In this document: piece by piece, positions 601 to 18,880 of the stretch | How the letters are laid out: every line of letters starts with the position of its first letter | Numbering within the stretch: position 1 is the first letter of the stretch | Assembly: GCF_006345805.1 (NCBI RefSeq) | Contig: NW_021832430.1 | Coordinates: forward strand, 186,001 to 250,000 | Direction: 5' to 3' | DNA length: 64,000 nucleotides | DNA from: Octopus sinensis | Taxonomy: Eukaryota | Position numbers and translations under genes: made by a program | Notes under the pieces: model-generated | Database searches by the model: none | Seen by the model: only the letters and a program-made list of their open reading frames with translations | What the model was told of the DNA's origin: nothing

Positions 601-839
601 AAAAAAAGAATCTTTTATAAACCCAATTATTGTTTAGTCACTTTATTTTTACGGAAGTAATTTACTTCCTTTGGTATTAAAGGTTTGATCAAATCAGAAA
701 AGACAGGTCCATACAATATGCAATTCAACACGATTCTATTCATCTTTATGTAGCGCAAAAAAATGTGTCCCTAATTAGAAGACGGAAATAAAGTTTGAAT
801 AACGCCAATTATGATGAACTGAAGATCTTTAGGAAGTTG

Positions 840-869
840 GCCAAATTTGGCTATAATAAACGCCAATAT
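840..869 (+). promoter_or_regulatory. Candidate promoter module of IgSF gene A: palindrome GCCAAATTTGGC + AATAAACGCCAATAT
   Basis: Ends 28 nt before the ATG at 897. The same module with the same spacing is upstream of paralog D (51143-51172) and paralog C (~26418-26447). Function is inferred. Confidence 0.5.
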
Positions 870-896
870 AATTCCAAAAGACCGTAATAAATCAAA

Positions 897-2760
897 ATGT
901 ATTATCTCTTCATATTGATTGCTCAGATGAAAGCTTTTTGCTTTCCTCCAGTAATGGAAATGTTTGAGACGAATTTTATTTTTATAAAAGAACACAACAG
1001 CATAACCTGCCCAATAAAATCGTCTTCTTCTGATAATTACAAGTATTTGATTACTGTATGACATATTCAGGTGGACTAAAGACGGGGTTCCTATTAGATT
1101 GAATAATTCATTGTATCGTACTCATGGAAGAAATCTTGTTCTCTACGGGAGTTCAGTTGACACACAAGTTTTTGAATGCACTGTCGAGAATAAATGTGGA
1201 AAAGAAACATCTCTTCCATTTAAAGTGGATTATCTAAAGCTAGAACACAGTATATTTGTGACCAGTGACGAGTTTAGATTTTTATACTCATCATCAGCCG
1301 TTTACAATTCTCAGCACTAAGGGCATTAATGATAACTGCACTTGGTTCGAAAAAAATTACCGGTCGTCAGAATTTTATCGATTTCGTCCACATATTGGTG
1401 AACGAATATTTGAACTTGACAACGACATGTACTTTAGATTTTTTTGTGAATACGACTCGTTTTCTCAGTACATGTGCGATTTTAAGCACGGAAAAATGTT
1501 ATTTAATTTCAAATATGCCATGAAAGGTTTTTTTGTAATTTTAAACAAAAAAGAAACCAACTTTGAACCAGTTCCCTTTTTTCCAAAAGGAGAAAATATA
1601 AAACTTGAGTTTGGAAAATCCCACAAAATTACTCCTTGTATATTTTTTGGATGGTTTTTTTAAAAAATATATTTTTAGGGGAATTAATATAATAAATTAT
1701 TATCAGAATGATTATTTTATGGGACGCAACAGGATAACGTTGAGTTCACGAAACAAAGAGGATATATATGAATTCTATGGAATTCCTAGCTTCAACGGAA
1801 ACCCTTTAAATGACCGCAGGCTAAATTTTAGAGTTAGTTTTTACGGTTTGATTGTATAAAATATTCACAGAATTGCCTTCTATTTCCGACAAATTTCATT
1901 CACTGAATGCTACTATTGGAACAACAGCAATCTTTGAATGTTTTCCGAAATCAGGATACCCAAAGCCTACAATAAAGTGGTACTTGGATTCTGAGGAATA
2001 TCGTATTTTATGTTTTTATTAGATTTAGAGACAAAATTGTATTCTTTTGAGGTGTCTTTGAATGATAATAGCACGATATTAACTTTCTACAATATAACTC
2101 GATCAATGAGTATTCGCTGTCTCATAAAAAACAATTTTGGAAAAGCTGCAAGGACTGTTTACCTCAAAGTAACAGAAAAACCGACAATTTTTATGTCGCA
2201 CTCATCTCCAGTCGAAATAAGTCAATTTAACCAACATGTTATTAAATGTTGGGGAACTGTCGATCCAATTCATAAATTGCAGATAAACTGGTTATATAAC
2301 AACGAATTGATAAAAAGAGATATAACAAATTCAAACTATTTAATAAAAAATTCAAAAGTCGGAAGTGAGTTTTTATTTACCCTGTCGTCTAATCAGTTAC
2401 AAAAAATGAAGAAGAAAGTAGTACCTTTAACCTGTATCATATTTGATGAAACATCACAAGTAAATCAAACAATAGAAATTTTAATAAATTATGGTGAGTT
2501 TTTCTAATGTCATAAATCTAGTTGAAATTGTATCAAAAATGGCAGTCTTTTGGGTCGTTTTTGGAATTTTGGGAATTATTGGAATTTTTTTATTTGTTGC
2601 ATTCGTTTATATTCGGAGAAGGAGTTTAAAATTATTGGCGAATAAATTGTATTGTTTTAGTCATTTTTATTTCAGCTTTAATGACCCTGCAAAGCTAAGA
2701 GACTTTTGGGTTGAAGAATTGGAATGCTTTTCAAATTTTCAAAATGTTCCCCGCACTTAG
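897..2760 (+). CDS. IgSF type-I membrane protein, paralog A (549 aa; signal peptide, ~5 Ig-like domains, TM, short tail)
   Basis: Manual splicing of 8 GT-AG introns (1043-1070, 1250-1277, 1527-1553, 1654-1678, 1846-1870, 2003-2028, 2494-2521, 2649-2675) gives a 1650-nt open frame. Motifs: MYYLFILIAQMKAFC signal, CPIK..WTKDG..FECTVENKCG, FECFPKSGYPKPTIKWY..CLIKNNFG, and a hydrophobic TM followed by RRR. Confidence 0.85.
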
Positions 2761-2949
2761 GGTTTTAAAAAAATAAACAAAAAATAATTAAAATTTATTT
2801 CACCGGCCGTAGGATGGACGGCGCCGTTGAGTGGACACTAAGCAATATTTTTAATTAAAAATATTTTTACAATAATAATCTCGATTAAAAATCAAAATTA
2901 TTTAAATAATTTTAAATAATTTTCCTAATTTTTGTTTAAATTAAGAATC

Positions 2950-3690
2950 GCGTGAGAATGGTTTTGTTGTATCTATTGCAATCCTTTGTTGAAAAATTAA
3001 TTAATTATATTGAAACTGGCTTGATAGAAGATGAAACACAGAGGAAAGAACGTTTTAAAATACGTTCTCTCTCAAAAAATTTTATTTATGAGCAATCTGT
3101 GCTTTTCATTCTGAAAAATGGTAAAAAACTAAGATTCTTCACTATCGAAAAAAATGAATTTAAGATGAAAACAATTGAGGTAAATATAAAATCAAATTTT
3201 GTAGGCTGAACACAATTTAAACCATTTTGGTCGTGATAGGCTTTATTCCAAACTCTGTGAAGAAATTTATCCGATTACGAGAAAAGAGGTCCTTACTATT
3301 GTAGGCCGGTGTGAAGTTTGCCAGGTTTAATATTTATGAGCAATATAGGCGATGCGTTTGATGGCCACTAAACCAACTATTACTCCTATTATAGCTTATG
3401 AATTAGAACAGAGAAATAATGTAGTAGAAAATTTAGAAAAAGCAGGAGCGAAAATGTCTAAAAAAAGGAAATGGAAATTCGACGAAGAGGATATAAATGT
3501 CGGAGATTCTGTTATTATCCGACATGATAGAGACGCAAATGTGAATAATAGGAAATATCCTCTTCACGATGAAATATCTTCAGAGAAATTTTATATCGTC
3601 GACAAAAAAATAATTTATGTGTGTTAAAAGATGAAAATGGAACAGAAATTGAATCCATTCACATTAGTAGACTCAAACGATTAGTTTAAA
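2950..3690 (+). mobile_element. Internally deleted Ginger-like integrase gene with two tiny introns
   Basis: Removing 3180-3204 and 3325-3348 joins KTIE|AEHNLNHFGRDRLY..CEVCQ|AMRLMATKPTITPIIA (HHCC zinc motif + linker). The catalytic core is missing. The C-terminal GDSV-like domain is present and frameshifted. Confidence 0.7.
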
Positions 3691-4339
3691 TGTTTGGTTA
3701 ATAAAATTTTAAAAATTGTATAAAAAGTTTTTCAACTTAAGGCCGAAGGCCGCATAGGGGAATAGTTGGATTCCAAAAAAATCCGGCCGTAGGGCAATTG
3801 GTTTAGGTTGGACTTACTACCTGAAAGCCTAAGGCTGGATAAGAAGTAATACGTGTGCAGCAATTAAGGTTTGGTTAGGGTTCCCTTTAGAAATCTGTAC
3901 TGGTCATCTCTAAAATTGCTGTTAGGATACCAACGTCTATTTTATTTAATTTGACATCTTATATTCTATTTCATTGTTTTGATGATCTTTTCAAGGCCGC
4001 AAAGAAAAAATATTCGAGAAATGTAATTTTTATTAGAAATTTCAAATGTAACCGAACGTAACCGGTTGAAATTTATTGAGGACGGAGTTCGGCGTCAGTT
4101 TTAGAAATGTCAGCATTGAAATGTAATCTTGAATTCATTTCATTGGATGTGCACAAATCTTCAAACCAGTATGCAAGATGAGCTGCACTGCAAGGGTATT
4201 GGGATTCCAGCTTCCATAGTCAATCGAGAAATCATGTCCTTTATATGACTCAGACTTCTAATCGGTTTAAAAGAACTAATCCCACATTTCATTCTCATAA
4301 ATTGACAATGCAAGAGCGTTGTCTCGCGTGGGAAACTTC

Positions 4340-4480
4340 CGTGAGTCATCTGGGGGCATCGGATGTTTGTTTTTGTTCCAAAATAATTTAATTTAGATTG
4401 TCGAAACCTTGTTCCAATTATATATTCTGTTTTCTCAGCGTTTATTTTTAAGAATGATATTGCAAATTTTTTGGTCAATT
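4340..4480 (-). mobile_element. LINE RT C-terminal fragment (CR1/L2-like); duplicated near 28950-29050
   Basis: FLKINAEKTEYIIGTRFRQSKLN resembles the LKLNxxKTEYIIIGTRQ motif at the end of the LINE RT domain. Confidence 0.5.
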
Positions 4481-4862
4481 TATTTACAGTACTTTCTAAT
4501 TAGTAGGTAATGCATTTCTGAAATCTCAATAATAAGAATATTGGCATTATTCAGTATTCATTACAGAATATACGATATTAAACCGTTCGCTCGTTCTTAG
4601 AGATTCTCCACTCAATAGGCAAAGCCTTGGAAGGTTTTATAAAGGCCGTGGATCTGGAGCCCAATTACAAGTCGGCGACTAACACCCATGTGTGTGGTGA
4701 CATAGTCATGTCATGGAAAAGCACTAAGTATCTTGTGTGATTGAGAGTCTAATCTTATTAATCACACCCGAAACGAGAAAATGTGTAGTGAAATGTGTGC
4801 GTAGTAGGGCAGCAGTGTTATGCAAAACTCTCAATGCACAGAACATAGTCAATACCTTAAAC

Positions 4863-5790
4863 CAGTGGTTCCCAACCTTAAGGTGCTCGCGGAACCCTTT
4901 TGGGCTAATTAATTTTTTGCGGAACCCCTCCAATTCAATTATTATAATTTCACTTAAAACATAATAGTAATAACCAAAAACAATTTTAATGTGAACATTG
5001 AGGTAATTTTTTATCATAGCATAGTTGTGTAACGTTAGGAGTTATTGTTGACAACTGTATCCTCATATCAGCGGAAGCATTAAGTTTATTTCTATATTTT
5101 GTTTTGGTGGATGTATATATTGAAAACCCAGACTCGCATAAGTAAGTCGTTGGAAAAGGTAATAGTTTACGTATAGCCTTTTCTGAGATATCTGGATATT
5201 TTGAAATGTATCCCCTCCAAAAATTAAAAAGGGATTCATTTTTATATAACTGATATGACGCTGATTCTGATGTCAAATCAATAAGATGTTCATATAAAAC
5301 TGCCAATCCTTCAGTAGATTCATCAATTTAAATAGCGAAACCATTCGAATTATTCAAACGAATTAGTAAATGTGTTTCAATATTTTCCGAAAGTTCCTGA
5401 ATTCGCCTTGAAATAGTATTATTTGACAAAGGAACAAGATCCAGTTTCTTAGACATTTGTTCGCCATAAATACACTCGATGATTTTTTTTGAACATGGCT
5501 TTATAAGATTTTCGGCAATTGTATGTGCCTCTCCACAACGTGCTACAAGATGACTCACCTGTTTGATTAAAATAATTATATACTTCATAAGATGCTCTGG
5601 TCGATTTTAAATTGTCGTCTTTCGCAAAATTAGACATTTCCAAGTTGCACCTTGTAGATGAATTTAATTTGTTTTGAAAAAAGGAAATATCTTTATCCTT
5701 TAAATGAGGATGCTTCATCAATAAATGTCTTGATAGTTTGGCAGGAACAAGAGATGTGTTAGGCATTATATGATGGCATATTACACATTC
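4863..5790 (-). mobile_element. Degraded hAT (Buster/Charlie, ZBED5/SCAND3-like) element
   Basis: TIR-like cagtggttcccaacc at 4863. Frameshifted transposase pieces include LVPAKLSRHL, HTIAENLIKP, LSNNTISRRI and the dimerisation motif LPFPTTYLCESGFS. The partner TIR was not found. Confidence 0.85.
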
Positions 5791-6639
5791 TGCCGTATGT
5801 GGTAAATCAGATCCATTCTGAGAAAACCCATATGAGAGGTAGCTTTCATCATATTTTCTTTTCTAACTTAACCACTGACAATATCGCAATCATAATTGAA
5901 AATGCTCTAAAATCTAATACTAACTTACAACACAGCCGTTACAATAGGTGCAAAAGAGTTTCCGTGGACGAATATCGTCTTGATTTAAAAAATTCTCTAA
6001 TTGAATTCAACATCAACAGCTTTCGCTTTTCAGACGCTGCAGTAAATAATTGATTACAGATCAAACAACTTCAAAATTCAAAGAATCTAAAGGACATGAA
6101 TACCTTGATATAAGAAAACTTGAAATCTGATGAATTTGCCACTTCTGGTTAAAATACCCCGTTCAATCCGATTTAGCAGGCAAATACGGTAATAGAATAT
6201 TACATTTTATTCATCTAACAAAAATGATTTGAAAGTTGCCAAATCTCGAAAAAGCTATCATTCACTTAATCTATACCGACTTTAAATGCAGATGAGGTCT
6301 CGAAATGTATTAAAACTCGAAAAACTCCCTTTCCACGAGTGCTAACAACATTTCAATCTACCATCTTAAGAAACTTTGCCCTGACTCCATATATGCCATA
6401 GTGTATATTTACAACAATTCTGTTAAAAAAACAAAATTCTTTCCCCTTAAAAGAAATCACGCCTCCTTCCATTAACCAAACCAAACGGCTTAATATCAGG
6501 CCAGAAAGAAAAAAATATCCCTTAATAAAAAAAATTATCCCCTAATTATCACTTAATATCAGGTCAGAAAGAATTAGAAACCCATAATTGATGACCAAGA
6601 ATCAGAAAACTAAATTACAGCTTTTTAAAAAGGACGACT

Positions 6640-6810
6640 AAATCTCAATGAGCACCTAGACCCATTCGTAAAAACTCTCAGAGGACTCGATACAGACATC
6701 ACGCTCTATGAAGCTATTTCAGTCTTGAGCAAGTTGAAATATGGCAAAGCTTCGGGACCAGACAACGTGAATACAAAATTATTAAAATATGCACCGATAG
6801 AGTTCTAAAT
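6640..6810 (+). mobile_element. LINE RT N-terminal fragment
   Basis: LSKLKYGKASGPDNVNTKLLKYAP (KAxGPD motif preceding RT domain 0). Confidence 0.6.
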
Positions 6811-7079
6811 ATATCAAGTAAACTTTCCGGAGTCTCTTGCTTAATAACATTTAGCAACATTGTGAATTCGCATTTTTTATAATTCGTTAATCATCCAAAT
6901 GTTCCAGTTCGCTGAGGTCCTCTTCATCACTACTGTTATTAGCCCAGAAACTCTCAAAAATTGCATTTATTATAATATCCGAATCAATCAGACTTTATCA
7001 GATGTTTTTTTTCCAACAGTCATATTCCAAAGCTTTTTCAGAACAATGTGTCTGTAATCTCGTCCCATGCCTTATTAGC

Positions 7080-7770
7080 TAATCGTGAATCGCCATGAAA
7101 TATTCTACTCGAATTGTTTTTTTGGCAAGCCAGGCGGTGTTGGTCAAGGTATACCAAAAGGTCAGACACACGAGCTCTGGATGCAATAGAGTTCCAGGAA
7201 ATTTGAACGAGAAATCTCCAGGCCTCTCAGGAAAGGAGCGATCCCAGGTAGCGAGCCCATCTGAAGAGCACCGGTCATGCAAGATCCGAAAGTTTTGTGG
7301 TAGATTTCAGAGGCCAGGTTGTTGCACATCGAAAGGAAGGATAGATATGCCAGCAGTGCCAAATCGGATGCAGTACGGATTCTCGCACCTCCGAATCTCA
7401 GTGGGAGCAAACATTGAGCCCACCCCGGAGCATCAAGGCGGACGTTGAGGACTGATTTAGCGGCTTTTTTCAGAATGATGTCGTATGCAAAAAGTAGATC
7501 CATTTGCAAGAAACAGGGATTGCTTCGGAGAGTAAGTTTCGGCAGATGGATGCTGTTCCTCAGAAGGAAAAAAGCAGTGGTTAAGTCCAGGATAGAACCC
7601 CGATAAGTAGGTCACGAAGGACACAGTCAAAAGCCTTTGATATATCGATACCAAGGATAACCGTAGCTTTTTTAAATTTCTGCTGGACAGCGCAGCGCCA
7701 TCTGTGACTCCAGACTATATCAGCTGTGGATTTTCCAGCCCTGAATCCGCTGTGACTGGGGGAGAGATAT
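7080..7770 (-). mobile_element. CRE-like non-LTR retrotransposon fragment
   Basis: WAQCLLPLRFGGARIRTASDLALLAYLS matches the post-RT LPxRxGGLG region typical of CRE-clade elements. Confidence 0.7.
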
Positions 7771-8139
7771 TCATTAACAGCTCGGGTTATGAGAACGAAT
7801 GTAACGAGTGAGAAAGTTTACGAATTAATATAACGTGTTAAAAATTGATTAGGTTTTATTTTACAAATTAGAGTTTATAAAAAATAAGTAATAAGTAATT
7901 AATTAAATATTCAGTTTGGCTGTATTATTAATAACTAATTATTTTTAAATCTGTCGGAGGTCAATCGACTTTCGCAACCTATTATTGATCTTTAAAGCGT
8001 TTAACGGCAACGGCTCATTGTCAACCTGGGCTCATTACAAACCTGTCACAATTAATATAACTTCCATTTTTGGATACAGTAATTTGAACCTTCTTCCTAT
8101 TATTTTCCTTATTACATGGAAAAATAAAGCGTATAAATA

Positions 8140-10046
8140 ATGCTTAATTTTCCGCTCACTTTAATTTTATTCTTCAGTCAAACAAAAAATATATGTATTC
8201 CTCCAACTATGGAAATGACCCCAACTATTTTCATCCCAAATATAAAAAATCACACCATAAAATGTCCAATTGATGCAATTCCAGCTATTGAATACCAGTA
8301 TGTTCTATTATCACATGTTAGATGGACTAAAAATGGAGTTCCCATTTCATCTGAATATAATGAGTTTTATCATATAGATGGTCGAGATCTCGTATTTAAT
8401 CAACCGTTCGTCACCGAAGGCATTTTTAAATGTTCTGTCAAAAATCAATGTGGCCAAGAGACTTCGCTCTCAGTCACAGTAAACGCTATAAAAAAAGAAA
8501 CGAGTATCTTTATAATCATGAATAGTTATAGTGATATATAAAGACAAGTATTTCGCCGTTCTCAAAGGCAAAACCTTTGATTCCAAATGTTTGTGGTTTG
8601 AACATTCTGAAGACGGTATAAGAAACCTAATTGATGAACGTGGACCGATAAACAATAGATTGTTTGTGTTGGATAATGATCTTTACATAAAATTCTTTCG
8701 TAAAACTGATCCTTACTTATACTACTGTATGTTGGACTTACAACCCATGAGAATATTTTTTTTTGAAAATTTCAAATCAGGTTTCTTTCAATTTTTTTAA
8801 AAAAAGATTCCTGTTTTTTAATTCCTCACTTTCCAAAAGGACGGCACCTTCAAATTCTTCTCGGAAGCACTGAAGAACTTATTCCCTGTTTGTTTTTTGG
8901 AAGGTTTTGTGAATTATTGATTTTAGGAATTATGACAAAATTGAATATTTTGAAGAAAAAAATTTAGTAGGAACTAACTTTTTGATCGTGAATTCGACCA
9001 TCGATACGCAATTCAAATCATTTTCTTGTGTTCCTTCATTCGAGGGGGTTTCTTTATTTCACTATTCAGAGAACTTTTTCGTATCCGTATATGGTTTAAA
9101 TTTGTTAAATATTTACAGAATTGCCTTCTATTTCCGACTCATTTCATTCATTAAATATTACAGAAAAAGAAGTGGCAAAATTTGAATGCTTACCAGCATC
9201 TGGCTATCCCAAACCCGAAATAAAATGGTATGCAAATTCCATCAAAATAAGTATTTATTCTCGTAATTCTATTTAGATACAAACTCGCATGATTTTTCCT
9301 TTGCTTTATTTAACGATTCTACAGTTCTATACGTTTTTAATCCACATAAGTCAATGAGTATTCGGTGCATTGTTGCAAATATACATGGAAAAGTGGCAAA
9401 AACAGTTTACTTGAATATCATCCAATTTCCAACAATATCATTATCAGATCCACATATAATCAAAATATCTGAGTTAAAAAAAATATCATGTAAAGGAACA
9501 GTTGATCCATTTCGAAAATTAACATTTAAATGGTTATACGATGGGAAAGTGATAACAAAAAACAACAATTTAATAAAAATTATGGAAACTGAAAAAAACA
9601 AAACCAATTTTGTATTTACCCCGTCGTTAGAAGAATTAAAAAGAATTGATAATATGCAGAAATCTCTTACCTGCGTTGTATCCGACGGCTTTTTACAAGT
9701 AAATAAAACAATAAACGTTACCTTTTTGTATGGTAAGTTTGTTTAATGAAAATGGTGTAGTGGAAAATTTGTGGGAAAAGACTCAGACAAACTTTCTTTG
9801 GATTATTCTTACGATAGGTTTTTTGATGGGAAATTTGTTAATTGGATTAGTAATTTGTCAGTACAAAAATTACTCAGGTTATATTATGAGAATATATTTT
9901 TAGTTTTTGGAAAATCTTTCGCGATTTGTTTGAATATCAAGATTTTCAGATTCAAGAAATTTCGAGAACCCAAAACTTTTTTTCTTGACGATCCAGACTT
10001 TATTCCAAGTTATCGAAAAGTGATATCCAAGATGCGTCTAAAATAG
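8140..10046 (+). CDS. IgSF type-I membrane protein, paralog B (~568 aa)
   Basis: Eight GT-AG introns of 22-28 nt at positions equivalent to gene A restore one frame (intron 2 acceptor is ambiguous, 22 or 28 nt). Motifs: signal peptide, KCPIDAIP..WTKNG..FKCSVKNQCG, FECLPASGYPKPEIKWY, ISCKGTVDP..LTCVV, and a TM near 9790-9860. Confidence 0.85.
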
Positions 10047-11619
10047 TCTTCAAAATGATATTTTTTCGCCTCATAGGCTATATTCTCAAATTAACCAAAT
10101 ATTATTAAAAAATCTTGTTCAAAAAAACGTGAACACTAGTGTTTTTCTACTAAATTTTGGGTTTTTATAGAATTTAAGATACAACGAGATGTCATTCCAG
10201 TTTTCTTACAAAAAAGTATTTAATTGCGAAAAAAATTAAGAAATAGAAATATCGATGGGTTTGCATTTGCCGCTGTTTAGAGATAGTCAGCTCTTCAAAA
10301 AACTGGAAATGATTCTGTTTATGTCTTTCATAACGACCTCAGTGTGTTCACTAATCGTAAAGTCATCAAGTACCAGAAGTTAACACTGAACGAAAGGTTC
10401 AGTCCAATATGGTCAACAAAGAGGACAAACCCTGCTGAATACCGCATTCTGACATGATAATTAGGTTTTCTTAGAATTTCGCATTCAAAATTCGTGTTAT
10501 CTTTTTTAGCATCATATAAAAATGGTCTAGAAAATCAACATCAGAAATAAATATTTTGGTCAAATTCTGGTTTAGGTTTCAAAATAAATTTGCTGAAAAG
10601 CTATACATGATTAGAATAACCTTGTTTTAAAATTAATGATGCTAAGGAAAACTGACATAAATTAAACAAATGAGAATTTTAAAAGGAAACAACCAATATT
10701 AAATTAATTCAGTCAAAATAGGTAACCATTAGGACTACTGTCAGTGTCAGAATTAGGAAACCAATGTTGAATTTTTGATTTCCTGAATATTTATTACATA
10801 CTACCTTTTGTGACATCATTACCAAAAGCGTCCTTTACTTTGTCGAAGGCATTCTATAACTAGAAAACTATAAAAGCAATACATTGACTTCCGAGCCGAT
10901 ATCGGTCTCTAAATAGACTGAAGGCAGTATCGTGCAGATTATCAAAACCAAGAAAAACATTCATATTTTGCGCAAATTCAAAATATAAATACAAAAATAA
11001 CGGACTAATTGAACACGTTGCCGGTGCATTAATCGCTCAATTACGTTGTAAAAAAGTAAAAAATAACAAGTTTGAAAGATTCTGTGCTTTTGTTCCTGTC
11101 CTAGAATAAAGCGATAAGCAATTTAATGTTTCAGTCATTCGTATTGGCACGCCAGTTCCAGTGGAAGGAATCAAAAGATGCCTCCGTTATAGAGGCGAAA
11201 GTAAACGCAAAGCATGTCGAAAAAGTGATAGTCTTTTTTGAGTTTCGAGTCACTAGGCTGAGTGCCAGGAATTCTCGCGGAAAAAGACAATTAATTGTAA
11301 AAAATTTATTATAAATCTAGATTTTTTTAAATTCTGTTTCAGTTAATAGATCGTCGAGCTTTCTAGGTCAGCCTCTTGAATCATCGTTGCACTGTCTTCC
11401 ACGTACTTCTAAACCTACTCTAATGTGACTACTCTTTTGAAAAAGGCGTCCTTTCTGTTGGCCACAGCTCAGGGACACAAAGACCTCCAGGTTTCAGAAG
11501 GACCATACAGCAGCACTTCTTAAAGAGGTTCAAACCCAAGGATCAGAAACTTACTAAGCAAAATTATTTTCTCCAATAAAACAAAATTCAAGTTATTTTC
11601 ATCAAATAAAAGAAATAGT

Positions 11620-11790
11620 GTTAGATATTTTCACGGTGAAAGATTTTGTTTGGCGAACATTATACCCGCGATAAATTTAGGGGTGGAAGTGTTCTAGCCT
11701 GTGGCTGTATTTTGTCTAAAGGAGTAAGCCGGCTCGTTTTTATTGATGGGATTATGACGGCTGCAAATTATGTTTAAATCTTAGAACAAA
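11620..11790 (+). mobile_element. Tc1 transposase fragment
   Basis: FRGGSVLACGCILSKGVSRLVFIDGIMTAANY matches the Tc1 KxGGGSVMVWGC region. Confidence 0.65.
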
Positions 11791-11799
11791 ATTTTTCTT

Positions 11800-12595
11800 C
11801 TACACATGCCACGAGCACCCTTGTCCAAGAGATTCTCCAACCCGTTACCGAATCTCCTATGGACTCGGAGTCAATCGCCGCAGAAAGTTGCTGGCTTGGG
11901 ATGTCTCTTGTGCTTCCGCAGAATACACACGCACAGGACGAATGGAACAGGATTCTCTGTGATCAGAAGTCGAACAACTTCAAGTCTAAGCTTAACCAAC
12001 ATCTCTTGGCTTGTTTATTGGCTGCCTCGCAACCATATTCGGGGGCTTGGTTGACCACCATTTCTATGGAATCGATTGGAACTTTATTGGACGACGATTC
12101 ACTGAGGATCGGTGACTCATTGCGCTTGGGACTAAACGTATGCCAAGAATACCGGTGCCCCTGTGGATCGACCGTTGACCCCTTTGGATTGCACCCATTA
12201 TCGTGTCAGAGAAGCTCCGGACGCTTTTCCCGACACGCTGCCCTGAACGACATAGTCAAGCGGACTTTTGAAACTGCCGGATTCCCATCGGAACGCAACT
12301 TGCACGGACACCAAATATCTTTACGTCAGCCGCAGAGCCGGGCTCCGCAGCTAACCTGGCAGAAACGCTAAAAATCAAGAAATACAGTGCATTATTGCAC
12401 CGTCATATCTTTGCCCCGATCGCAGTGGAGACACCGGGAATCCTCGGTCCCAGAACTAAAAAATTCCTTATTAAACTGGGGATTTGGCAAGCAGAAGGAG
12501 AAATGATCATCGGAACGGGCATGGCTTTTCCAACGCATATCAATAGCCATCTTGCGTGGGAATTGCCATTCCATCTTATCCTCTGCTGCTAATTA
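11800..12595 (+). mobile_element. CRE-like non-LTR retrotransposon 3' part (zinc knuckle + RLE), degraded
   Basis: SQPYSGAWL..SIGTLLDDDSLRIG..RLGLNVCQEYRCPCG..GLHPLSC..RHAALNDIVKR, followed by IFAPIAVETPG. Confidence 0.85.
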
Positions 12596-13668
12596 AATAT
12601 TTATTAACACTTTTTAACATTGCTTAAAGACGATGGAAAATTTAAATCAGTCCGCGGAAGAAATGTTTTAGTGATTTTGAATTTATGCACGATAACGACC
12701 CAAGTCTGTGAGGCAAGAGGAAAACACATTAATTATTAAAATACTTGTGGTCAAGTTTTTTGAACTAAGATTTTTTGTTTATGATGATTCTGACATCATC
12801 CCGGTTTAAAATATCTCAGTTCATCTTCTGTGTTGTTTGACATAATGTACCAGTCCATCTGTATGTTCAACTGATATCAGCAGTCGATATGCTGATCCTG
12901 AATTTACTCTTTTATTTATTTATTGACCAAAAGACCAGGGTGATTCCCGATTCAAGCAAGAGAGATACTTCTGAAAGGTTCGATCCTGCCCATATGATCG
13001 GACTGAGACGACGATGTCCCAGTGAATCTACTCTGAATAGCAATAGAAAATTTTTTACCTTGACTTTTTCCTTATCTAATGTAATTAGTAAAGTAACCAT
13101 AAAGTTGATCTAAAAATCAAAAATTGACTTTCAAAAGTCAACAAAGTTGATCCAAAAAAAAGTTGACCAAGGCAGGTATTTCGTCCTCTTTTGAGTTTGC
13201 CCCTTGCCTTCAAAATTTCAGGAATCGTCGGCAAGGCTGCGTCTCAACTTCTCACTGACTTTGGTACGACCAGAGGGAGCTGGCTCTTTCAGCGAAGCCG
13301 TGCTCCGTGGAAACTGCCATTCAATACGCATTGCAACGTCGTTGACATGATCTCTAGGCTCTTGACTATTCTTTGAGTTGCTTACTTATTCTGTTCTCAC
13401 AATCGATATTAACTAAAAATTCATTGAAAAATTCTTGGATATTTTTTAAGACTTTCAAGTAGGTGAGTTTTTTTGACAAGTGGGACGTTATCTGACCCGA
13501 CTAATCGTTCAGTTTTAAGTTTTTTGCTGGCTATTGAAGTTTCAGAATGAATGAGTGTTTTTATTTAACGCGAAACTGAGAGAACAAAAACAAGTTATTT
13601 GGTTAAAGCATCGGTCTTTATGAGACCTAACATTGAGGTTTTATAATCGCTTATTGAGGAGGTTATTA

Positions 13669-15108
13669 CACTCCATGGAATAAAAAACCGGATTTTCGAA
13701 TGCTTAATTTTTTTGATATTCTGTTTTTAATTTTAGACTTTTTTTTAATTTATAATGATAATCTTCGTAACTTTTCTTTTTATAATTTTTCAATAAATAA
13801 AAAAAAAATAATAATCTTTTTGTACAGCTAAACTGACTATATTAAATTTTTTCTGTGTAAAAAAAACCGGATTAGAAAAAAAGTCAAATGATTAATAATT
13901 AATGTGTCCTCCATGTGCCTTATAAAGCTCAATGCTTCTTCTTGGCATGCTTTCAGTTAATTTTCTCACAAATTCCATTGGTATTTCGTCCCAAATTTTT
14001 ATGATATTTTCGCATAAATCCTTTTTACTATGCAGCATTTTTTTACTCAATTCTTCTTTTATGTAGCTTCACACATGTTCAATTGGGTTCAAATCTGGTG
14101 ATTGTGGTGCCCAATTTAATAATTCAATTTTTTCTCATCCAAAAATTGTTTTGTTCTCCGTGAATTATGACAGGGGGCCAATCTTGTTGGAAAATAAAAC
14201 GATTTAGTCCCATTTTATCTGCCGATTTCCACAAATTATTTATTAAAATGTTAATATATACAGCAGAATTTATTTTTTCATTTACTATAACCAAATTCCC
14301 TTTTCCATGATAGGAGATACAACCCCATACCATAATTCTTCCACCATCAAACTTCAAAGTTGGCGTTAAATGGGCATAATTTAAGGCTTTATTTTTTTTC
14401 TAAAGCAAAATTTTCTTTTTTTAGATGAAAAAATTTCAAAGGAAGCCTCGTCACTCTATATAACAGTTCTCCACGTTTCATTGCTTATTGCAGAAAAGAT
14501 TATTGAAAGCTCGTATTGTTTTTCACTATTTTTTTTGCTAAAAAAGGATTTCTTTTACACACATGCTTTGTAATGATTTTCATGTAGATAATTGCTTATT
14601 GTTTTTTTGCAGACAACTTTTCCTGTAAAATCGAAGACTTCTTTCAGGTTGGCCAGTGTTTTTTTTGGATTTTCTTTCACAATGTTGGCAAGTTTACAAA
14701 TATTGGGTCTTCCAGAACCAGGTATACGATCAACAGTCCCTTTTTTATTTAACTTATTCAGAAAATCATTGAGAGTCGAAGTTGGAATATTCAGCTCCTC
14801 AACAATCTTCTTTTGTGTCCAATTTAATTGAATGAGAGCTAGAATTTTTCCTTTAGTGATTTTATCAAGCATTTTTTTCAAATACCTAAAAATTGGCTTA
14901 GCAACAGACTAATCAAAAAAAATCCGGTTTTTTAATACACGCTAAGATTTTATCAAGATCAATTATTCAAATATACATTATAATTTTAAAAATAGTAAAA
15001 AGATCAACAAACGATTGCTGAAAAGTAATTTAAAAATTGATGTACATTTAAAAAAATACTAGTATAAACATGCAAACTTGAAAATCCGGTTTTTTATTAC
15101 ATGGAGTG
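13669..15108 (-). mobile_element. Full-length degraded Tc1/mariner element (1440 bp)
   Basis: TIRs cactccatg(g/t)aataaaaaaccggattttc flanked by TA on both sides. Frameshifted transposase with HTH..PGSGRP and KFDGGRIMVWGCISYHG..FQQD. Confidence 0.92.
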
Positions 15109-15899
15109 TATATGTAAGTTGTGTTTATTATATTTAAATTTCTTCGCCTAGCTGTAAATCATGTATACTTTGATACAAGGGATCAGAATTTTGTGACCGC
15201 TAATCGACTCTAGTCTATCACATGACCGTAAATCGGTAAGTAGATGTTTATAAAAACGTTTTATAGGATATATTTGATCTGGTTGTGTATTTTTTGGTAA
15301 TAAAGTTTATATTATAAATAAACAAATAATATTTAATTTATTTTTTCTTCAATTTATATTATTTAATATTTTTAAATTATTAAATTAAGTGATTGTCACC
15401 TTATGCTACTCTATTGTTGGCTTATTTGTATTGTTAGATAAACCAGCCAGCCACTAATTTTGTAATTAGTGGTCGTGGGTTTATCTTAAATTTTGATGTA
15501 TGAGATTTCGATCAATTCATACTACAGTATTTAAACTATTTAAATATACCTTTTGATTTGATTAAATATTTCCAGTGGTGGGAATGTTTGAAACTAACAG
15601 CGCTGTGTTTAATTAATTTTTTTGTTATCTACTCTAAAAGAGTATTTTATACTTTACGCAAACTTTGCCGGGCACGCTGTTTTTGTGGTGCATTATATCA
15701 CTATTTCGTCCTCTTATTTAATTCATTCATTTTCTTTCTTATTTTTTTTATTTTCTGGCCGTCTTTGCTTTTCATGTAACGGGTATTTTCACCTTTCGTG
15801 TGTCATAAAGCGTGATTTAGTGAATAACACATGCCATTTCATTCACTGCATCCGTTGCCTTTCATACAGAATCTGTTTTGAATTCTCTTCGGTTAAAAC

Positions 15900-17870
15900 A
15901 TCCTTCCCCTCGAGCTGACATTCGAGAACACTCTCAAGCAATCAAATCTGCTCGCATTGTTTTCCCTAATGACGTGCTACCTTCTTGTTAAGCTGGATGT
16001 GCGAAACGTCTTAACAGTGTTCACAGGGATCATATCCTGAAAGTCGTTTACGCCCGTCGCGAAAAATATGCTAATCTCAGCGTCTGGTGTTCAACAAAGA
16101 GATCCATTAGTGCCTCTCATATTTGCCCTTGCAGTGGACCATGTTGCCTAAAGACTGTCAAGTTCGCTCAATTTCTGGTATCATATCACCCTGGGTGATT
16201 CGTTTGAATCCATACGGAACAATGTTGTTGATATTATTCTGGGGTTTGGCCAAATCGGTCTATCATTTAATGGTTCCAAGTCGGAGTTCACTCGGCTTTC
16301 CCCGACTATTCCCTATTTGATCAAGCTTTTGCATCCCTTTTTGAGAAGGTTGTCGGTCTCAGATCGACAGATCTAAAAGATCTGGTCGTCCTTGGTTCGC
16401 CAATAAGAAAAGTGAGTTAGTTCTGATCATGGAACAAATCTCGACCTTGATGCACACGTGAGGCCATTTTTCATTAAAAACTACCTTTGTATCCCGCGTC
16501 TCCCTTACTTACTCCGTTCATCCCCGACTTGTTTCCTGGAATTCGACCTGGATTTTATTATCTGGAAGTCTGTCAAGAAATTACTTAATGTTAACTTCTC
16601 TGGAGACAAACTTAGTTGTGCAATGTTACCTCTACGATTCGGTGGTATCCGCTCGTGCATGGAAATCGCTCTGCCTTGCTACCTATTTTCGCTTTCGGCA
16701 TCGAGAAATTTTGTTCATTCTGTTCTTTTTCCCCCTCCTGAACATTTCGAACTGAATGAATCTTTTTCTGCTCTCGAAGTTTGGACTGCATCTGGTCTTT
16801 TAAAAGACCTGAATAAAGTAGCTCAGATTCTAGCTCCTATATGCTTAACAGTTAATCCACACAAATCAAAGATCTTCAACATTGGCTACGAACAAGCAAT
16901 CTTTACTTCAGAAATCCGTCTTTTGTTTGACTATCATCTTTCAGCCATACGCACTGTTTTGCCTGAAGGTTTTACTCTTCTTGGCACGCCTCTTTTCTCT
17001 TCCTGAATTCCACCATTCCTCCACGCTAAACTTTGCATAATGGAAAAATCATTTGACGCTCTTAAATTCATCGAGCCAATGGGGCTTGCTTTCTACTGAA
17101 GAACTTTTTGCTTTTCTTCGTTTGGAGTACGCACTCCGTACTTCACCTTGTTTCCGTTTTCCTGACGAAATCGGTGAATTTTATTCGTTGCTGCGAAATA
17201 CTTTCGTTCAGATTTTTAACGTACATTTTGACGACAGGGGTTGAAAACAGGCTATCCTGCCTATCAGGCACGGCAGTCTCGGATTCCAGGCTCCCTTTGT
17301 TTTCTCTTTGCTATACTTTCTTTCTCCTCAGATCGATGCAGGTCTCTCGTAGTCCAGAACCTCCCTCTTCCCTCCGGATTGCCCACGGACCAAGAGTTTT
17401 CATATGACACAGCGTTATGGACAGAAAGCGGACTTAAAACTTCCGAAGACCTATTCCAAATGCGCAAGTGGGCGGAAGCCAGCAGCTCTCACTCTTTTCG
17501 GCACTTAGTGTTTCACGGAGACCAACACCGGCGTGCTTGCCTGTTTTAAGAAGCATCTCCACGTATGGAGACTTGGATTAACGCCTATCCCTCTCCTGCA
17601 GCAGGAACCTTGCTAGACCCAGAGTGCTAATGAATCGGAATCTCTCTTTGACTCGGCTTGGACATTTTCCAGCCTCACCAATCCCGCTGCGGGGCCTATA
17701 TAGACCGTTAAAGTATACACCCGCTCTCTTGCCGTAAAAGACCAGGGAGGATCCCCAGGCACGTGAAGCTGAACAGCATTAAAAAACGTCTATTTGAGGC
17801 AACCGACATCCCGTGCCGGCTGAAGCCAGAGGCCATACGGCGTTTCGCTCTTACCGTACAAGTGGGGTAA
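15900..17870 (+). mobile_element. Two stacked degraded CRE-like retrotransposon fragments
   Basis: IPRLPYLLRSSP..LPLRFGGIRSC, followed by a second RT C-terminus (LTVNPHKS..GFTLLGTPL) and the downstream AW..LL and zinc-knuckle region. Confidence 0.7.
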
Positions 17871-18272
17871 AGCGATCGTTGTAACGCAGGGTTTACCTTT
17901 CTCCTCAGCACTTTTCAACCTCCTTTTAAGTGACATGCCTGAAAAAGATTACAACCTGTTTCTATCCTATGCAGACAACATCATCATAGCCTAGACACAA
18001 CCTAATCAGTCAAGCTTCTACCATTCCTCCTTTATCAGTGCAGTTTAGAAATATGGAGAACCTTCTACATTCGTATATCAAACGTGATTACTTGTTTCTC
18101 CGTGTTCTACAACATTCAAACACATTACTGCAATCACTCTGACCATCTCCAGCAGAACCAAACCAATGTAGACGACCAGGAATTAGTCCTCCATAGCTAT
18201 GTTTGTTGTTGGATCCAAATCCATCCTAACGATGTGTCCGAATACCCTCTACCTGCATGCTGTAATTTCAAA
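17870..18272. mobile_element. Small RT fragment (+, ~17870-18000) and RTE-like 3' fragment (-, ~18000-18272)
   Basis: Plus strand reads FSSALFNLLLSDMP..YADNII. Minus strand reads RVFGHIVRMDLDP. Confidence 0.55.
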
Positions 18273-18880
18273 AGAGATTGGTGAAGTGCGCCCTCCAGAA
18301 GAAAGAGTGTGGTATGCTAGTTAGTCTTGACATTGAAAAGGCCTTCGACTTGGTGTGGCACGACGGCTTCCGGAGCTCCCTCGCCACGTGTGGGGTTTCT
18401 CCGTGTCTAAGGCGCTGGCTGTCGGGGTTTCTTGAATCTTGCGGACAGGTCGTGCGGCATCAGGGGGTCTTTTCTAAAGTCACAACAGTCCTTCGCGGGG
18501 TCCCTCAGAGCTCTGTGCTGAGTCCCACGCTTTTTAACGTCTTCATGGCTTCTGCGCCCATGCCAATCCATGATCGTACTGAAATGGTGATTTATGCAGA
18601 CGACATCATCCTCTGGGATCACTCGATGAAACCTGAGTGTGCGTGTCGTAGGCTACAGGTTGCTGTGGATGGACTTGTAAACTGGTGTGGGAGTAGGGGT
18701 TCAAAGATGCGTGCGTACAAGTGCAGTGTTCTCAAAGTCTGTAAAAGGACAAGGGGTTACACTAATTACGTTCCTAGGTTATTGCTGAACGGGTCAACAA
18801 TTGCTGCAGTTGATCGGATGACTTATTTGGGCGTGCTCTTTAAGCCGTCCGGTAAATTTGATGATCACATTGCACGTACG
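18273..18880 (+). mobile_element. APE-type LINE (I/Jockey-like) RT fragment; family pieces also at 23859-24230 (+) and 60420-60525 (-)
   Basis: LDIEKAFDLVWHDG, GVPQSSVLSPTLFN, YADDI and YLGV motifs. About 80 bp are shared with 23859-23938. Confidence 0.88.

What the first reader, a model, noticed from the sequence alone, without database searches (positions are those of the whole stretch)
1349..1402. Hypervariable, purely nonsynonymous patch in domain 2 of near-identical IgSF copies A and C
A and C are nearly identical, yet in 18 codons (A 1349-1402 EKNYRSSEFYRFRPHIGE; C 26927-26980 KKLYRWPEFYRFLPLVDN) I count 12 nucleotide differences changing 9 residues, with 0 synonymous. Across domains 2-3 the count is about 20 replacements vs 3 synonymous. 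The two membrane-proximal Ig domains show 3 vs 3 over a similar length. The patch lies between the conserved CxWF and R(L/I)FxxDND framework, after the Ig C-strand Trp, and is unalignable in B and D. This pattern fits diversifying selection on a ligand- or antibody-exposed loop, as in a variant surface antigen or recognition receptor (inference). Patchwork gene conversion from an unseen paralog is an alternative.
Basis: partly seen in the sequence, partly recalled or inferred. Interest (0 to 1): 0.85.

Follow-up and report, generated by a model that had tools for sequence, protein, structure and literature searches.

The report
Fast-diverging loop in duplicated parasite Ig genes
Two tandem, 97%-identical copies of a previously undescribed immunoglobulin-type membrane-protein gene, most likely from a dicyemid parasite co-assembled with an octopus genome, differ sharply in one 18-codon surface-loop stretch; the cluster is real, but the data cannot decide between adaptive change and an imported (converted) tract.

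Summary
A (1349-1402) and C (26927-26980) differ at 12 of 54 bases, changing 9 of 18 residues with no purely synonymous change. The two genes are otherwise 97.3% identical.

- **The cluster is not chance.** No permutation out of 20,000 reaches it (P=0.006 if adjacent substitutions are merged).
- **The genes look functional.** Both are intact 555-aa, 8-exon type-I membrane IgSF genes with 25-34 nt introns. They belong to a family of about 25 members in tandem arrays, found only on small contigs of a 2.72 Gb Octopus assembly. This probably means dicyemid parasite DNA.
- **Location of the patch.** It covers two loops around a short strand in a divergent Ig-like second domain.
- **Rate.** Patch dN (0.34) is about 10 times the neutral divergence (0.03). 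Lineages A and C are each enriched 11-12 fold.

The selection reading is only partly supported:
- "Zero synonymous" is not significant by itself (P=0.05-0.23).
- The same loop evolves at about the neutral rate in other family pairs.
- A single conversion from an unsampled paralogue about 92% identical fits equally well, although no donor exists in the assembly.
- Antibody pressure is implausible in a cephalopod host.

Verdict: a real, moderately interesting new member of a known kind.

The parts
897..2760 (+). Gene A: 8 exons (897-1042, 1071-1249, 1278-1526, 1554-1653, 1679-1836, 1871-2002, 2029-2493, 2522-2760). It encodes a 555-aa type-I membrane IgSF protein: signal peptide, five domains, transmembrane segment, 48-aa tail.
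   Evidence: GT-AG introns of 25-34 nt restore one open frame. The same splice sites are conserved in C and E. Pfam Ig_2 hits residues 26-101; I-set and Ig_3 hit residues 280-369, above their cut-offs. The boundaries of introns 5 and 6 are ambiguous by 6-9 nt.
1349..1402 (+). The patch in copy A (codons 133-150, EKNYRSSEFYRFRPHIGE), in exon 3, which encodes domain 2.
   Evidence: 12 substitutions against C; Nd 11.5, Sd 0.5. It is the top window of the scan statistic. In the AlphaFold model it is residues 24-41 of the domain: end of a strand, a loop, a short bridge, a second loop.
26927..26980 (+). The patch in copy C (KKLYRWPEFYRFLPLVDN).
   Evidence: It is the only place in the 2.72 Gb assembly within 3 mismatches of this 54-mer.
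1289..1463 (+). Wider tract of raised A-C divergence around the patch (18 differences in 175 nt). This is the maximal extent of a possible conversion tract.
   Evidence: A-specific changes 9, C-specific 8. Synonymous differences about 2.5 over about 31 sites (8%), against about 2.5% elsewhere.
26475..28364 (+). Gene C: the same 8-exon model as A, 94% protein identity. Its stop codon is displaced, adding 10 residues.
   Evidence: Intron 3 is 26 nt in C and 27 nt in A, so it must be spliced out for C to stay in frame.
1679..1732 (+). Second, weaker cluster at the start of domain 3 (N228Y, I229Y, R241D, R243T). All changes are nonsynonymous.
   Evidence: 7 substitutions in 54 nt, the second-best window. 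It is not significant on its own.
714..18282 (+). The A-unit of a segmental duplication: 714-2799, 4170-4541, 10058-11190, 11462-11654, 16951-17199 and 17968-18282. The pieces are separated by insertions, one of which carries gene B.
   Evidence: Self-BLAST. Non-coding pieces are 2.6-4.0% diverged from the C-unit.
26290..31053 (+). The C-unit, the compact counterpart of the A-unit.
8140..10046 (+). Gene B, a distant family member (about 37% identical). The 3' end of the model is uncertain.
51201..53093 (+). Gene D, a family member (52% protein identity to A). It has a 99.2%-identical twin, D', 23.5 kb downstream, outside the window.
25163..26236 (+). Reverse-transcriptase (RVT_1) fragment that abuts the 5' end of the C-unit.
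   Evidence: A-C homology starts at 26290.

Best explanation
A and C are young tandem duplicates, about 3% diverged at neutral sites. They belong to a lineage-specific family of five-domain IgSF type-I membrane proteins, probably cell-surface adhesion or recognition molecules of a dicyemid parasite of Octopus.

The patch is the exposed loop region of the divergent Ig-like second domain. In this subfamily the region has lost the disulfide tether that other members carry. After the duplication, both copies took amino-acid replacements there about ten times faster than neutral sites change. C became more hydrophobic (L, W, P, L, L, V) and A more charged (E, R, E).

The most likely cause is a short burst of positive selection that separated the binding specificities of the two copies. 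Domain 1, domains 4-5 and the transmembrane segment stayed under purifying selection.

Shown here: the cluster, the intact genes, the loop location, the rate excess on both lineages, and the absence of a donor in the assembly. Inferred: surface exposure in vivo, a binding function, selection as the cause, and the dicyemid origin.
For: - **Rate excess.** Patch dN 0.34, against gene-wide dS 0.031 and non-coding divergence 0.026-0.040. Binomial P of at least 11 nonsynonymous hits in 42 sites at the neutral rate is 4e-8. The scan statistic gives 0 of 20,000 permutations.
- **Both lineages changed.** With E as the third sequence, both lineages are enriched in the patch. A has 6 changes (10.8-fold, P=4.5e-5) and C has 5 (12-fold, P=1.4e-4). 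The long E branch is enriched only 1.8-fold.
- **Recurrent hits.** Codons 147-148 changed in all three lineages: H/L/Q and I/V/S.
- **Few synonymous changes.** Synonymous change in the patch (0.5 of 11.8 sites) stays at the neutral level.
- **Purifying selection elsewhere.** Omega is 0.24-0.27 in domains 4-5 and 0.5 in domain 1. Splice sites and frames are intact in A, C and E.
- **No donor.** No other place in the assembly lies within 3 mismatches of either 54-mer. No exon-3 copy is closer than E. The assembly nevertheless resolves 99%-identical duplicates and has family-bearing contigs of 0.35 to at least 0.92 Mb.
- **No local template** for template switching.
- **Structure.** The patch is modelled as loops around a conserved short strand in a confident Ig-like model, pLDDT 86.
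Against: - Within the patch, 0-1 synonymous of 12 changes is not significantly different from neutral expectation (P=0.05-0.23).
- The implied omega of about 8-10 over 18 contiguous codons on two lineages is extreme.
- In other family pairs the loop's pN (0.21-0.31) is about equal to background pS (0.17-0.5), so omega is about 1 and there is no sign of sustained diversifying selection.
- Three near-identical pairs show no cluster in this loop.
- Branch lengths from three sequences are equally explained by one conversion of C (or A) from a paralogue about 92% identical.
- The 175-nt tract around the patch has somewhat raised synonymous divergence (about 8% against 2.5%), as conversion predicts, though from only 2-3 sites.
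- Long identical runs in D/D' and L023/L024 suggest that conversion or recombination acts in this family.
- Ten of the 12 substitutions sit in four tight groups. If these count as single events, the cluster loses significance.
- There are no expression, population or read data.
Confidence: 0.4

Rival explanations
1. Short-tract gene conversion (54 to about 175 nt). After the duplication, one copy received the loop region from a third, roughly 92%-identical paralogue X. X is missing from this assembly: lost, collapsed, or present only on another haplotype. The loop itself simply evolves near-neutrally, and no positive selection is needed.
For: - In the patch the three branch lengths are a=6, c=5, e about 10. 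This fits a tree in which X left the A-E path about one third of the way from A, with a uniform loop rate about 2.7 times the gene average.
- That rate agrees with omega of about 1 for this loop in other pairs.
- Differences extend beyond the patch (1289-1463), and synonymous divergence there is about 8% against 2.5% elsewhere.
- The family is tandemly arrayed. It shows mosaic divergence with 1.1-1.25 kb identical runs (P=1.5e-4 and 5e-5).
- Many changes are multi-base within a codon, as when a diverged template is copied.
Against: - There is no donor. Only A, C and E are recovered by DNA search. Exon-3 protein search finds nothing closer than E (72%), then 40%. Neither 54-mer has another match within 3 mismatches.
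- The assembly separates 97-99.7% duplicates, so a 92% paralogue should have been assembled.
- Other paralogues (65-69% nt identity) are too diverged to act as donors.
- Synonymous sites inside the patch are not raised: 0.5 observed against about 2.5 expected from an E-like donor.
Confidence: 0.33
2. Old allelic lineages kept by balancing selection. The ancestral locus carried two long-lived alleles differing mainly in this loop. The duplication (for example unequal crossing-over), or later allelic recombination, placed one version in A and the other in C.
For: - In the patch, A-C distance (dN 0.34) approaches A-E and C-E (0.41, 0.37), although the genes are six times closer elsewhere.
- The sample is probably a population of parasites. 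Near-identical contig sets (99.7% and 98.8%) look like haplotypes or strains.
Against: - No alternative haplotype of the A/C region is present in the assembly.
- Putative haplotype pairs differ by only 0.2-1.2%, far less than the roughly 8% background-equivalent age needed.
- There are no population data.
Confidence: 0.1
3. Mutational cluster without selection. A few multi-nucleotide mutation events (error-prone repair) fell by chance in an unconstrained loop.
For: - Adjacent double substitutions are over-represented between the A and C units outside the patch: 11 against about 3.4 expected.
- Ten of the 12 patch substitutions lie in four groups spanning at most 5 nt.
- With substitutions within 2 nt merged, the patch holds 6 events (P=0.6).
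- Domains 2-3 outside the patch evolve at omega of about 1.
Against: - Merging only adjacent substitutions still leaves P=0.006.
- Polarisation puts neighbouring changes on different lineages: 1392 and 1394 on C, 1393 on A, and 1395 on E. They are therefore not single events.
- No local template was found.
- Two lineages would each need an independent chance cluster at the same place.
Confidence: 0.09
4. Assembly or polishing artefact. Reads from a related strain or species of parasite in the same host were mixed into the consensus of one copy over a short stretch.
For: - The DNA appears to come from a parasite population inside an octopus sample, and several dicyemid species can share a host (PMC6736024).
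- Near-identical contig sets exist.
Against: - The patch has no indels and keeps the reading frame.
- The short strand between the two loops is conserved while the loops vary, a biological pattern.
- Both versions differ from the only other close relative, E.
- The rest of the 4.3 kb duplication shows no comparable window.
Confidence: 0.06

Closest known systems
Rapidly evolving, tandemly duplicated vertebrate IgSF receptor families (KIR/LILR, CEACAM, SIRP-type paired receptors)
   Same: These are type-I membrane proteins made of Ig domains, expanded by tandem duplication. Recent duplicates differ mainly in loops of particular ectodomain domains, and membrane-proximal domains are conserved. 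Positive selection and gene conversion are both documented causes there (established knowledge). Here the same contrast appears: omega is 0.24-0.27 in domains 4-5, against a patch dN of 0.34 in domain 2.
   Different: There is no sequence relationship beyond the Ig fold, and no homologue in 5.8 billion proteins. No ITIM or ITAM-like motif is visible in the tail (read from the sequence). The variable part is domains 2-3, not the N-terminal domain, which is conserved. The organism is a roughly 30-cell parasite, not a vertebrate.
Dscam1 hypervariable Ig2/Ig3/Ig7 of arthropods
   Same: Variability is confined to parts of specific Ig domains within an otherwise constant multi-Ig membrane protein. 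Dscam1 Ig domains are among the best Foldseek matches to the domain-2 model (TM 0.55-0.62).
   Different: Dscam diversity comes from mutually exclusive splicing of exon arrays within one gene. Here each gene has a single exon 3, and variation is between whole-gene duplicates. The Foldseek E-values are weak (>=0.025).
Parasite variant surface-protein families (for example var/PfEMP1, VSG, Giardia VSP, schistosome micro-exon genes)
   Same: A multicopy, lineage-specific family of predicted surface proteins in a parasite, with a hypervariable exposed segment and hints of mosaic recombination.
   Different: There are only about 25 members. There is no evidence of expression switching. The host is an octopus without antibody-based immunity (plus established knowledge). 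The long-term rate in the loop is about neutral rather than elevated.
Diversified invertebrate IgSF immune molecules (snail FREPs, amphioxus VCBPs)
   Same: IgSF proteins of non-vertebrates with unusually variable Ig-loop regions.
   Different: Those are secreted lectin or chitin-binding fusion proteins of the host's own immune system. This is a five-domain transmembrane protein with no lectin or fibrinogen domain.

Membership tests
Immunoglobulin superfamily (whole protein) | At least one domain matching curated Ig models above threshold | tested here: met
   Pfam Ig_3 scores 53 bits (cut-off 30) and I-set 49.1 bits (cut-off 23.7) on residues 280-369. Ig_2 scores 32.1 bits (cut-off 27) on residues 26-101.
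Immunoglobulin superfamily (domain 2, which holds the patch) | Ig beta-sandwich with a B-F cysteine pair | tested here: inconclusive
   There is no Pfam hit and no PDB sequence hit of meaning. The AlphaFold model of exon 3 (pLDDT 86, pTM 0.76) has seven strand elements, with Cys20 and Cys66 invariant or nearly so. Foldseek's best matches are all Ig domains, but E>=0.025 and TM is 0.42-0.70.
Type-I single-pass membrane receptor | N-terminal signal peptide, one transmembrane helix, short cytoplasmic tail | tested here: met
   Read directly from the translated sequence: a hydrophobic N-terminus (MYYLFILIAQMKAFC), then VFWVVFGILGIIGIFLFVAFVYI followed by RRR, then a 48-aa tail. This layout is conserved across the family alignment. 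No dedicated predictor was run.
Codons under diversifying/positive selection | dN significantly greater than dS at the same codons | tested here: inconclusive
   Nd 11.5 over 42.2 sites against Sd 0.5 over 11.8 sites gives omega 7.8. However, binomial P(0 synonymous)=0.052 and P(<=1)=0.23.
Codons under diversifying/positive selection | Replacement rate above the neutral rate of the surrounding DNA | tested here: met
   Patch pN is 0.27, against gene-wide pS 0.031 and non-coding divergence 0.026-0.040. P is 4e-8 uncorrected; the scan statistic gives 0 of 20,000.
Codons under diversifying/positive selection | Recurrence of the signal at the same sites across the family | tested here: not met
   In pairs L009/L010, L020/L022, L020-22/L026 and L012/L017, loop pN is 0.21-0.31 against background pS of 0.17-0.54. 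There is no cluster in D/D', L012-14 or L023/24.
Gene-conversion tract | A donor sequence matching one copy over the tract only | tested here: not met
   Only A, C and E are found by DNA search. No other match lies within 3 mismatches of either 54-mer. The next exon-3 relatives are 40% identical. A donor absent from the assembly cannot be excluded.
Gene-conversion tract | Silent-site divergence raised within the tract | tested here: inconclusive
   In the tract 1289-1463, about 2.5 synonymous differences fall over about 31 sites (8%), against 2.5% elsewhere. Inside the patch the count is 0.5 over 11.8 sites. The likelihood ratio between the hypotheses is about 1.
Parasite variant surface antigen | Variation driven by host adaptive (antibody) immunity | tested here: not met
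   The assembly's mitochondrial COX1 is identical to Octopus vulgaris/sinensis records. Cephalopods lack antibodies (established knowledge).
Parasite variant surface antigen | Mutually exclusive or switching expression of family members | not testable with these tools
   No transcript data are available.
Dscam-type hypervariable Ig receptor | Arrays of alternative exons for the variable half-domain within one gene | tested here: not met
   Each exon-3 hit lies in its own complete gene with its own exon 7. There are no tandem exon-3 arrays.

The most novel reading that the evidence does not exclude
Dicyemids, animals of about 30 cells with a drastically reduced gene set, keep a private, tandemly expanding repertoire of IgSF surface receptors. 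A loop of domain 2 is re-tuned by a burst of positive selection after each duplication. This would give a germline-encoded recognition code for attachment to host renal epithelium, host or species specificity, or recognition between co-infecting dicyemids.
Probability: 0.3. Interest if true: 0.7.

Novelty: new member of a known kind. Interest (0 to 1): 0.45.

Why it matters
If selection is the cause, this family would be the first candidate host-interaction or recognition gene repertoire in dicyemids. Their attachment and host specificity have no known molecular basis, and the D. japonicum genome and stage-transcriptome papers do not mention an IgSF expansion (PMC6736024, PMC6854800).

There is also a practical point. 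An octopus reference assembly appears to contain hundreds of kilobases to megabases of parasite DNA on unplaced contigs. That can contaminate cephalopod gene catalogues, and it could also be mined as a long-read dicyemid resource.

If conversion is the cause, the finding is an ordinary feature of tandem gene families.

Tried and rejected
- **Folding the full spliced protein.** Only exon 3 (domain 2) was folded.
- **Homologue searches for the family.**
  - The full-length protein gave one weak hit (E=7.6e-4) among 5.8 billion proteins.
  - The exon-3 ORF gave nothing, so no population or read-derived variants were recovered.
  - A domain-2 profile against 1.84 billion representatives hit only synthetic tandem constructs.
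  - The same profile against PDB sequences gave no meaningful hit.
- **Naming the organism through beta-tubulin.** I tried the beta-tubulin gene on contig C7755. It is too conserved: at most 95% identical to many animals, with no exact hit and no Dicyema-named record. It shows only that the small contigs are metazoan, not octopus-identical, and have 26-27 nt introns.
- **Second mitochondrial COX1.** Searching the assembly for COX1 recovered only the octopus gene and nuclear mitochondrial fragments.
- **Template switching.** A search for 11-mers shared between either patch and nearby sequence on both strands found only low-complexity matches and one chance match. Rejected.
- **E as an allele or orthologue of A/C.** Rejected: only the roughly 2 kb gene is homologous and the flanks are not syntenic.
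- **Myxozoan origin.** Considered because of the short introns. Rejected: the host mitochondrial code and COX1 are octopus, not fish.
- **Apicomplexan origin.** Rejected: the tubulin is 93-95% identical to animal tubulins.
- **Automatic gene models.** The dynamic-programming gene models sometimes choose a wrong mini-intron, as in A. The A, C and E models were therefore fixed by hand and checked by conserved splice sites.
Full report
**Observation.** A 1349-1402 encodes EKNYRSSEFYRFRPHIGE and C 26927-26980 encodes KKLYRWPEFYRFLPLVDN. An ungapped comparison gives 12 substitutions in nine codons, three of them double hits. None is purely synonymous; Nei-Gojobori path averaging gives Nd 11.5 and Sd 0.5.

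**Gene models.** The window is eukaryotic, and the genes are interrupted by very short GT-AG introns.
- Gene A runs from ATG 897 to the stop at 2758-2760, in eight exons with introns of 25-34 nt. It encodes 555 aa: a hydrophobic signal, five domains, a transmembrane helix followed by RRR, and a 48-aa tail.
- Pfam recognises domain 1 (Ig_2) and domain 4 (I-set, Ig_3) above threshold.
- Copy C (ATG 26475) has the same structure. Its third intron is 26 nt against 27 nt in A, so it must be spliced out for C to remain open.
- A third close copy, E, lies on another contig (C9495, minus strand). It is 87.4% identical in DNA, intact, and keeps all splice sites. Its flanks are unrelated to those of A and C, so it is a dispersed paralogue, not an allele.

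**Family and organism.** Searches of the whole assembly with exon 3 and exon 7 find about 25 loci. All are on small contigs, and several form tandem clusters. Five lie on this contig: A, B, C, D and D'. Chromosome-size contigs give only noise.

Automatic models give intact 470-630 aa proteins for nearly all members, with 141 predicted introns of median 26 nt. The alignment shows a conserved architecture. Its most variable segments are the loop region after C-x-W in domain 2, and domain 3.

The evidence on origin is as follows:
- The assembly is 2.72 Gb, and its mitochondrial COX1 is identical to Octopus vulgaris/sinensis records.
- A beta-tubulin gene on contig C7755, which also carries four family members, has 26-27 nt introns. 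It is at most 95% identical to any protein in the database.
- Among animals, introns this short are known only in dicyemids and myxobolid myxozoans (PMC13644364).
- Dicyema japonicum lives in the renal sacs of Octopus sinensis. Its genome has 36.7% GC and 49% repeats with many LINEs (PMC6736024).

I therefore infer, without direct proof, that the window is dicyemid DNA co-assembled with its host. No homologue of the family exists among 5.8 billion proteins or 1.84 billion representatives. The dicyemid genome papers do not mention it.

**Is the cluster more than chance?** A and C belong to a segmental duplication whose pieces total 4,338 aligned nt with 132 substitutions (3.0%). Non-coding pieces are 2.6-4.0% diverged.
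- The patch is the densest 54-nt window, with 12 substitutions. The next has 7, at 1679-1732 in domain 3. None of 20,000 permutations reaches 12.
- Adjacent double substitutions are over-represented in the background (11 against about 3.4 expected). Merging adjacent substitutions still gives P=0.006.
- Merging everything within 2 nt removes the signal (P=0.6), but that merge collapses any dense cluster by construction.

**Rates.**
- Gene-wide, A-C dS is 0.031 and dN 0.027.
- In the patch, dN is 0.34 and dS 0.04.
- Domain 2 outside the patch has omega 0.37, domain 3 about 1.5, domains 4-5 about 0.25, and domain 1 about 0.5.
- The patch's replacement rate exceeds the neutral rate about ten-fold (P about 4e-8 before correction for scanning).
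- Within the patch alone, 0-1 silent changes out of 12 is not significantly fewer than expected (P=0.05-0.23).
- The domain 2-3 versus domain 4-5 contrast (20:3 against 3:3) gives Fisher P=0.083.

**Polarisation with E.** In the patch, 6 changes are A-specific, 5 are C-specific, 10 are E-specific, and one site differs in all three. Compared with the rest of the gene, this is a 10.8-fold enrichment for A, 12-fold for C, and only 1.8-fold for E. A-C distance in the patch (dN 0.34) is nearly as large as A-E (0.41) and C-E (0.37), although the genes are six times closer elsewhere. Codons 147-148 changed in all three sequences.

**Structure.** Spliced proteins could not be submitted. Exon 3 alone, with 15 family sequences, gave a confident model (pLDDT 86, pTM 0.76). 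It has strands at residues 9-11, 21-25, 43-46, 49-52, 63-68 and 71-76, and a two-residue bridge at 33-34.

The patch is residues 24-41. It covers the end of the strand carrying Cys-x-Trp, a loop, the short EFYRF bridge (identical in A and C), and a second loop up to the next strand. Foldseek finds only Ig domains (shark VNAR, RAGE, Dscam1, FGFR, IL-18R), but weakly: E>=0.025, TM 0.42-0.70.

Most paralogues carry a Cys four residues after the Trp and a partner in D-x-x-C-x-Y-x-C. A, C, E and D lack this pair, so their loop is untethered. A, C and E also lack a Cys conserved in domain 3.

**Donor search.** DNA search with 256 nt finds only A, C and E. Each 54-mer has no other match within three mismatches in 2.72 Gb. 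After E, the nearest exon-3 relatives are 40% identical. The assembly resolves duplicates that are 97-99.7% identical, and it has family-bearing contigs of 0.35 to at least 0.92 Mb. A 90%-range paralogue should therefore have been assembled if it were present. No local template for template switching exists.

**Family-wide behaviour of the loop.** In four independent pairs with background pS of 0.17-0.54, the loop's pN is 0.21-0.31, so omega is about 1. Three near-identical pairs (98.8-99.7%) show no cluster there. Divergence along duplicates is mosaic:
- D/D' share a 1,247-nt identical run (P=1.5e-4).
- L023/L024 share a 1,139-nt identical run (P=5e-5).
- A/C share a 300-nt identical run (P=0.012).

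Purifying selection explains part of this, because only about 340-480 sites in those runs are neutral. The pattern nevertheless suggests that homogenising conversion or recombination occurs in the family.

**Interpretation.** Two explanations fit about equally well.
1. *A burst of positive selection in both copies after duplication.* It accounts for changes on both lineages, silent sites staying at the neutral level inside the patch, the physicochemical shift (C gains L, W, P, L, L and V; A gains E, R and E), recurrent hits at the same codons, and the absence of a donor. It requires an extreme omega of about 8-10.
2. *One short conversion from an unsampled paralogue about 92% identical.* With a loop rate about 2.7 times the gene average, this reproduces the three branch lengths, agrees with omega of about 1 elsewhere, and fits the slightly raised silent divergence in the 175-nt tract. 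It requires a donor that a contiguous assembly does not contain.

Silent-site likelihoods do not discriminate between the two; the ratio is about 1. I give selection 0.40 and conversion 0.33. Old balanced alleles get 0.10, a mutational cluster 0.09 and an artefact 0.06. Antibody-driven variation is rejected because the host is a cephalopod.

**Comparison and novelty.** The pattern works like fast-evolving tandem IgSF receptor families such as KIR/LILR and CEACAM, and superficially like Dscam's variable half-domains. There is no sequence relationship to any of them, no alternative-exon array, and the variable part is the middle of the ectodomain rather than its conserved tip. The family itself appears undescribed. 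This is a new member of a known kind. Its interest is moderate, and would rise if selection and a host-interaction role were shown.

Noticed in passing
whole window (G000:C8901:186001-250000) and contigs C7755, C7757, C8481, C8697, C8701, C8702, C8851, C9495, C9530, C9947, C10580, C12463, C12638: The window is probably not octopus DNA. Genes here have 20-34 nt introns (median 26). The assembly's mitochondrial COX1 is exactly that of Octopus vulgaris/sinensis. The IgSF family occurs only on small contigs. The likely source is a dicyemid parasite co-assembled in an octopus reference genome.
   Followed up: partly
window 51201-53093 (D) versus G000:C8901:~260.7-262.6 kb (D', L007); also L023 versus L024: Near-identical duplicates show mosaic divergence. 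D/D' share a 1,247-nt run without any difference (P=1.5e-4), L023/L024 share a 1,139-nt run (P=5e-5), and A/C share a 300-nt run at window 1801-2101 (P=0.012). This hints at homogenising gene conversion or recombination in the family.
   Followed up: partly
window 753-754, 1355-1356, 1662-1663, 1725-1726, 2574-2575 and elsewhere in the A-unit/C-unit alignment: There is an excess of adjacent double substitutions between the duplicated units: 11 outside the patch against about 3.4 expected. This could be a multi-nucleotide mutation signature, or small alignment effects near indels.
   Followed up: partly
window 1337-1345 and 1460-1480 (domain 2), 1760-1790 (domain 3); family alignment A3/A4: The A/C/E subfamily (and D, for domain 2) has lost cysteines conserved in other members. 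These are the loop Cys four residues after the Trp and its partner before Y-x-C in domain 2, and a Cys in domain 3 (EFYGIPS against ELICIPS). E has also lost the FFC cysteine.
   Followed up: partly
window 1679-1732 / 27256-27309: A second small cluster of A-C differences sits at the start of domain 3. It has 7 substitutions in 4 codons, all amino-acid changing, at positions that also differ in E.
   Followed up: partly
L016 (G000:C7755:~165 kb): One family member carries a long insertion of TNNTILD-like tandem repeats in domain 3. The repeats are rich in N-x-T glycosylation sequons.
   Followed up: no
window 43426-44394 (+); 18278-18922 (+); 25163-26236 (+): There is an apparently intact Tc1/mariner-type transposase ORF (HTH_Tnp_Tc3_2 plus DDE_3) and two reverse-transcriptase fragments. 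The second fragment ends about 50 nt before the 5' boundary of the C duplication unit.
   Followed up: partly
window 48290-49344 versus 62945-64000: A 1,056-nt direct repeat at 99.3% identity lies 14.7 kb apart, running to the end of the window.
   Followed up: no
G000:C1425:413645-414982 and G000:C13516:2594-3931: A full-length COX1 with the same score as the mitochondrial contig is embedded in a nuclear-size contig. Many COX1 fragments also lie on chromosomes. These are nuclear mitochondrial insertions or a misassembly in the host genome.
   Followed up: no
window 2758-2760 versus 28335-28364: The stop codon of A (TAG) is changed in C, which reads on for 10 more codons (LVFKKINKK and the next stop). 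E also lacks A's stop at this position.
   Followed up: no
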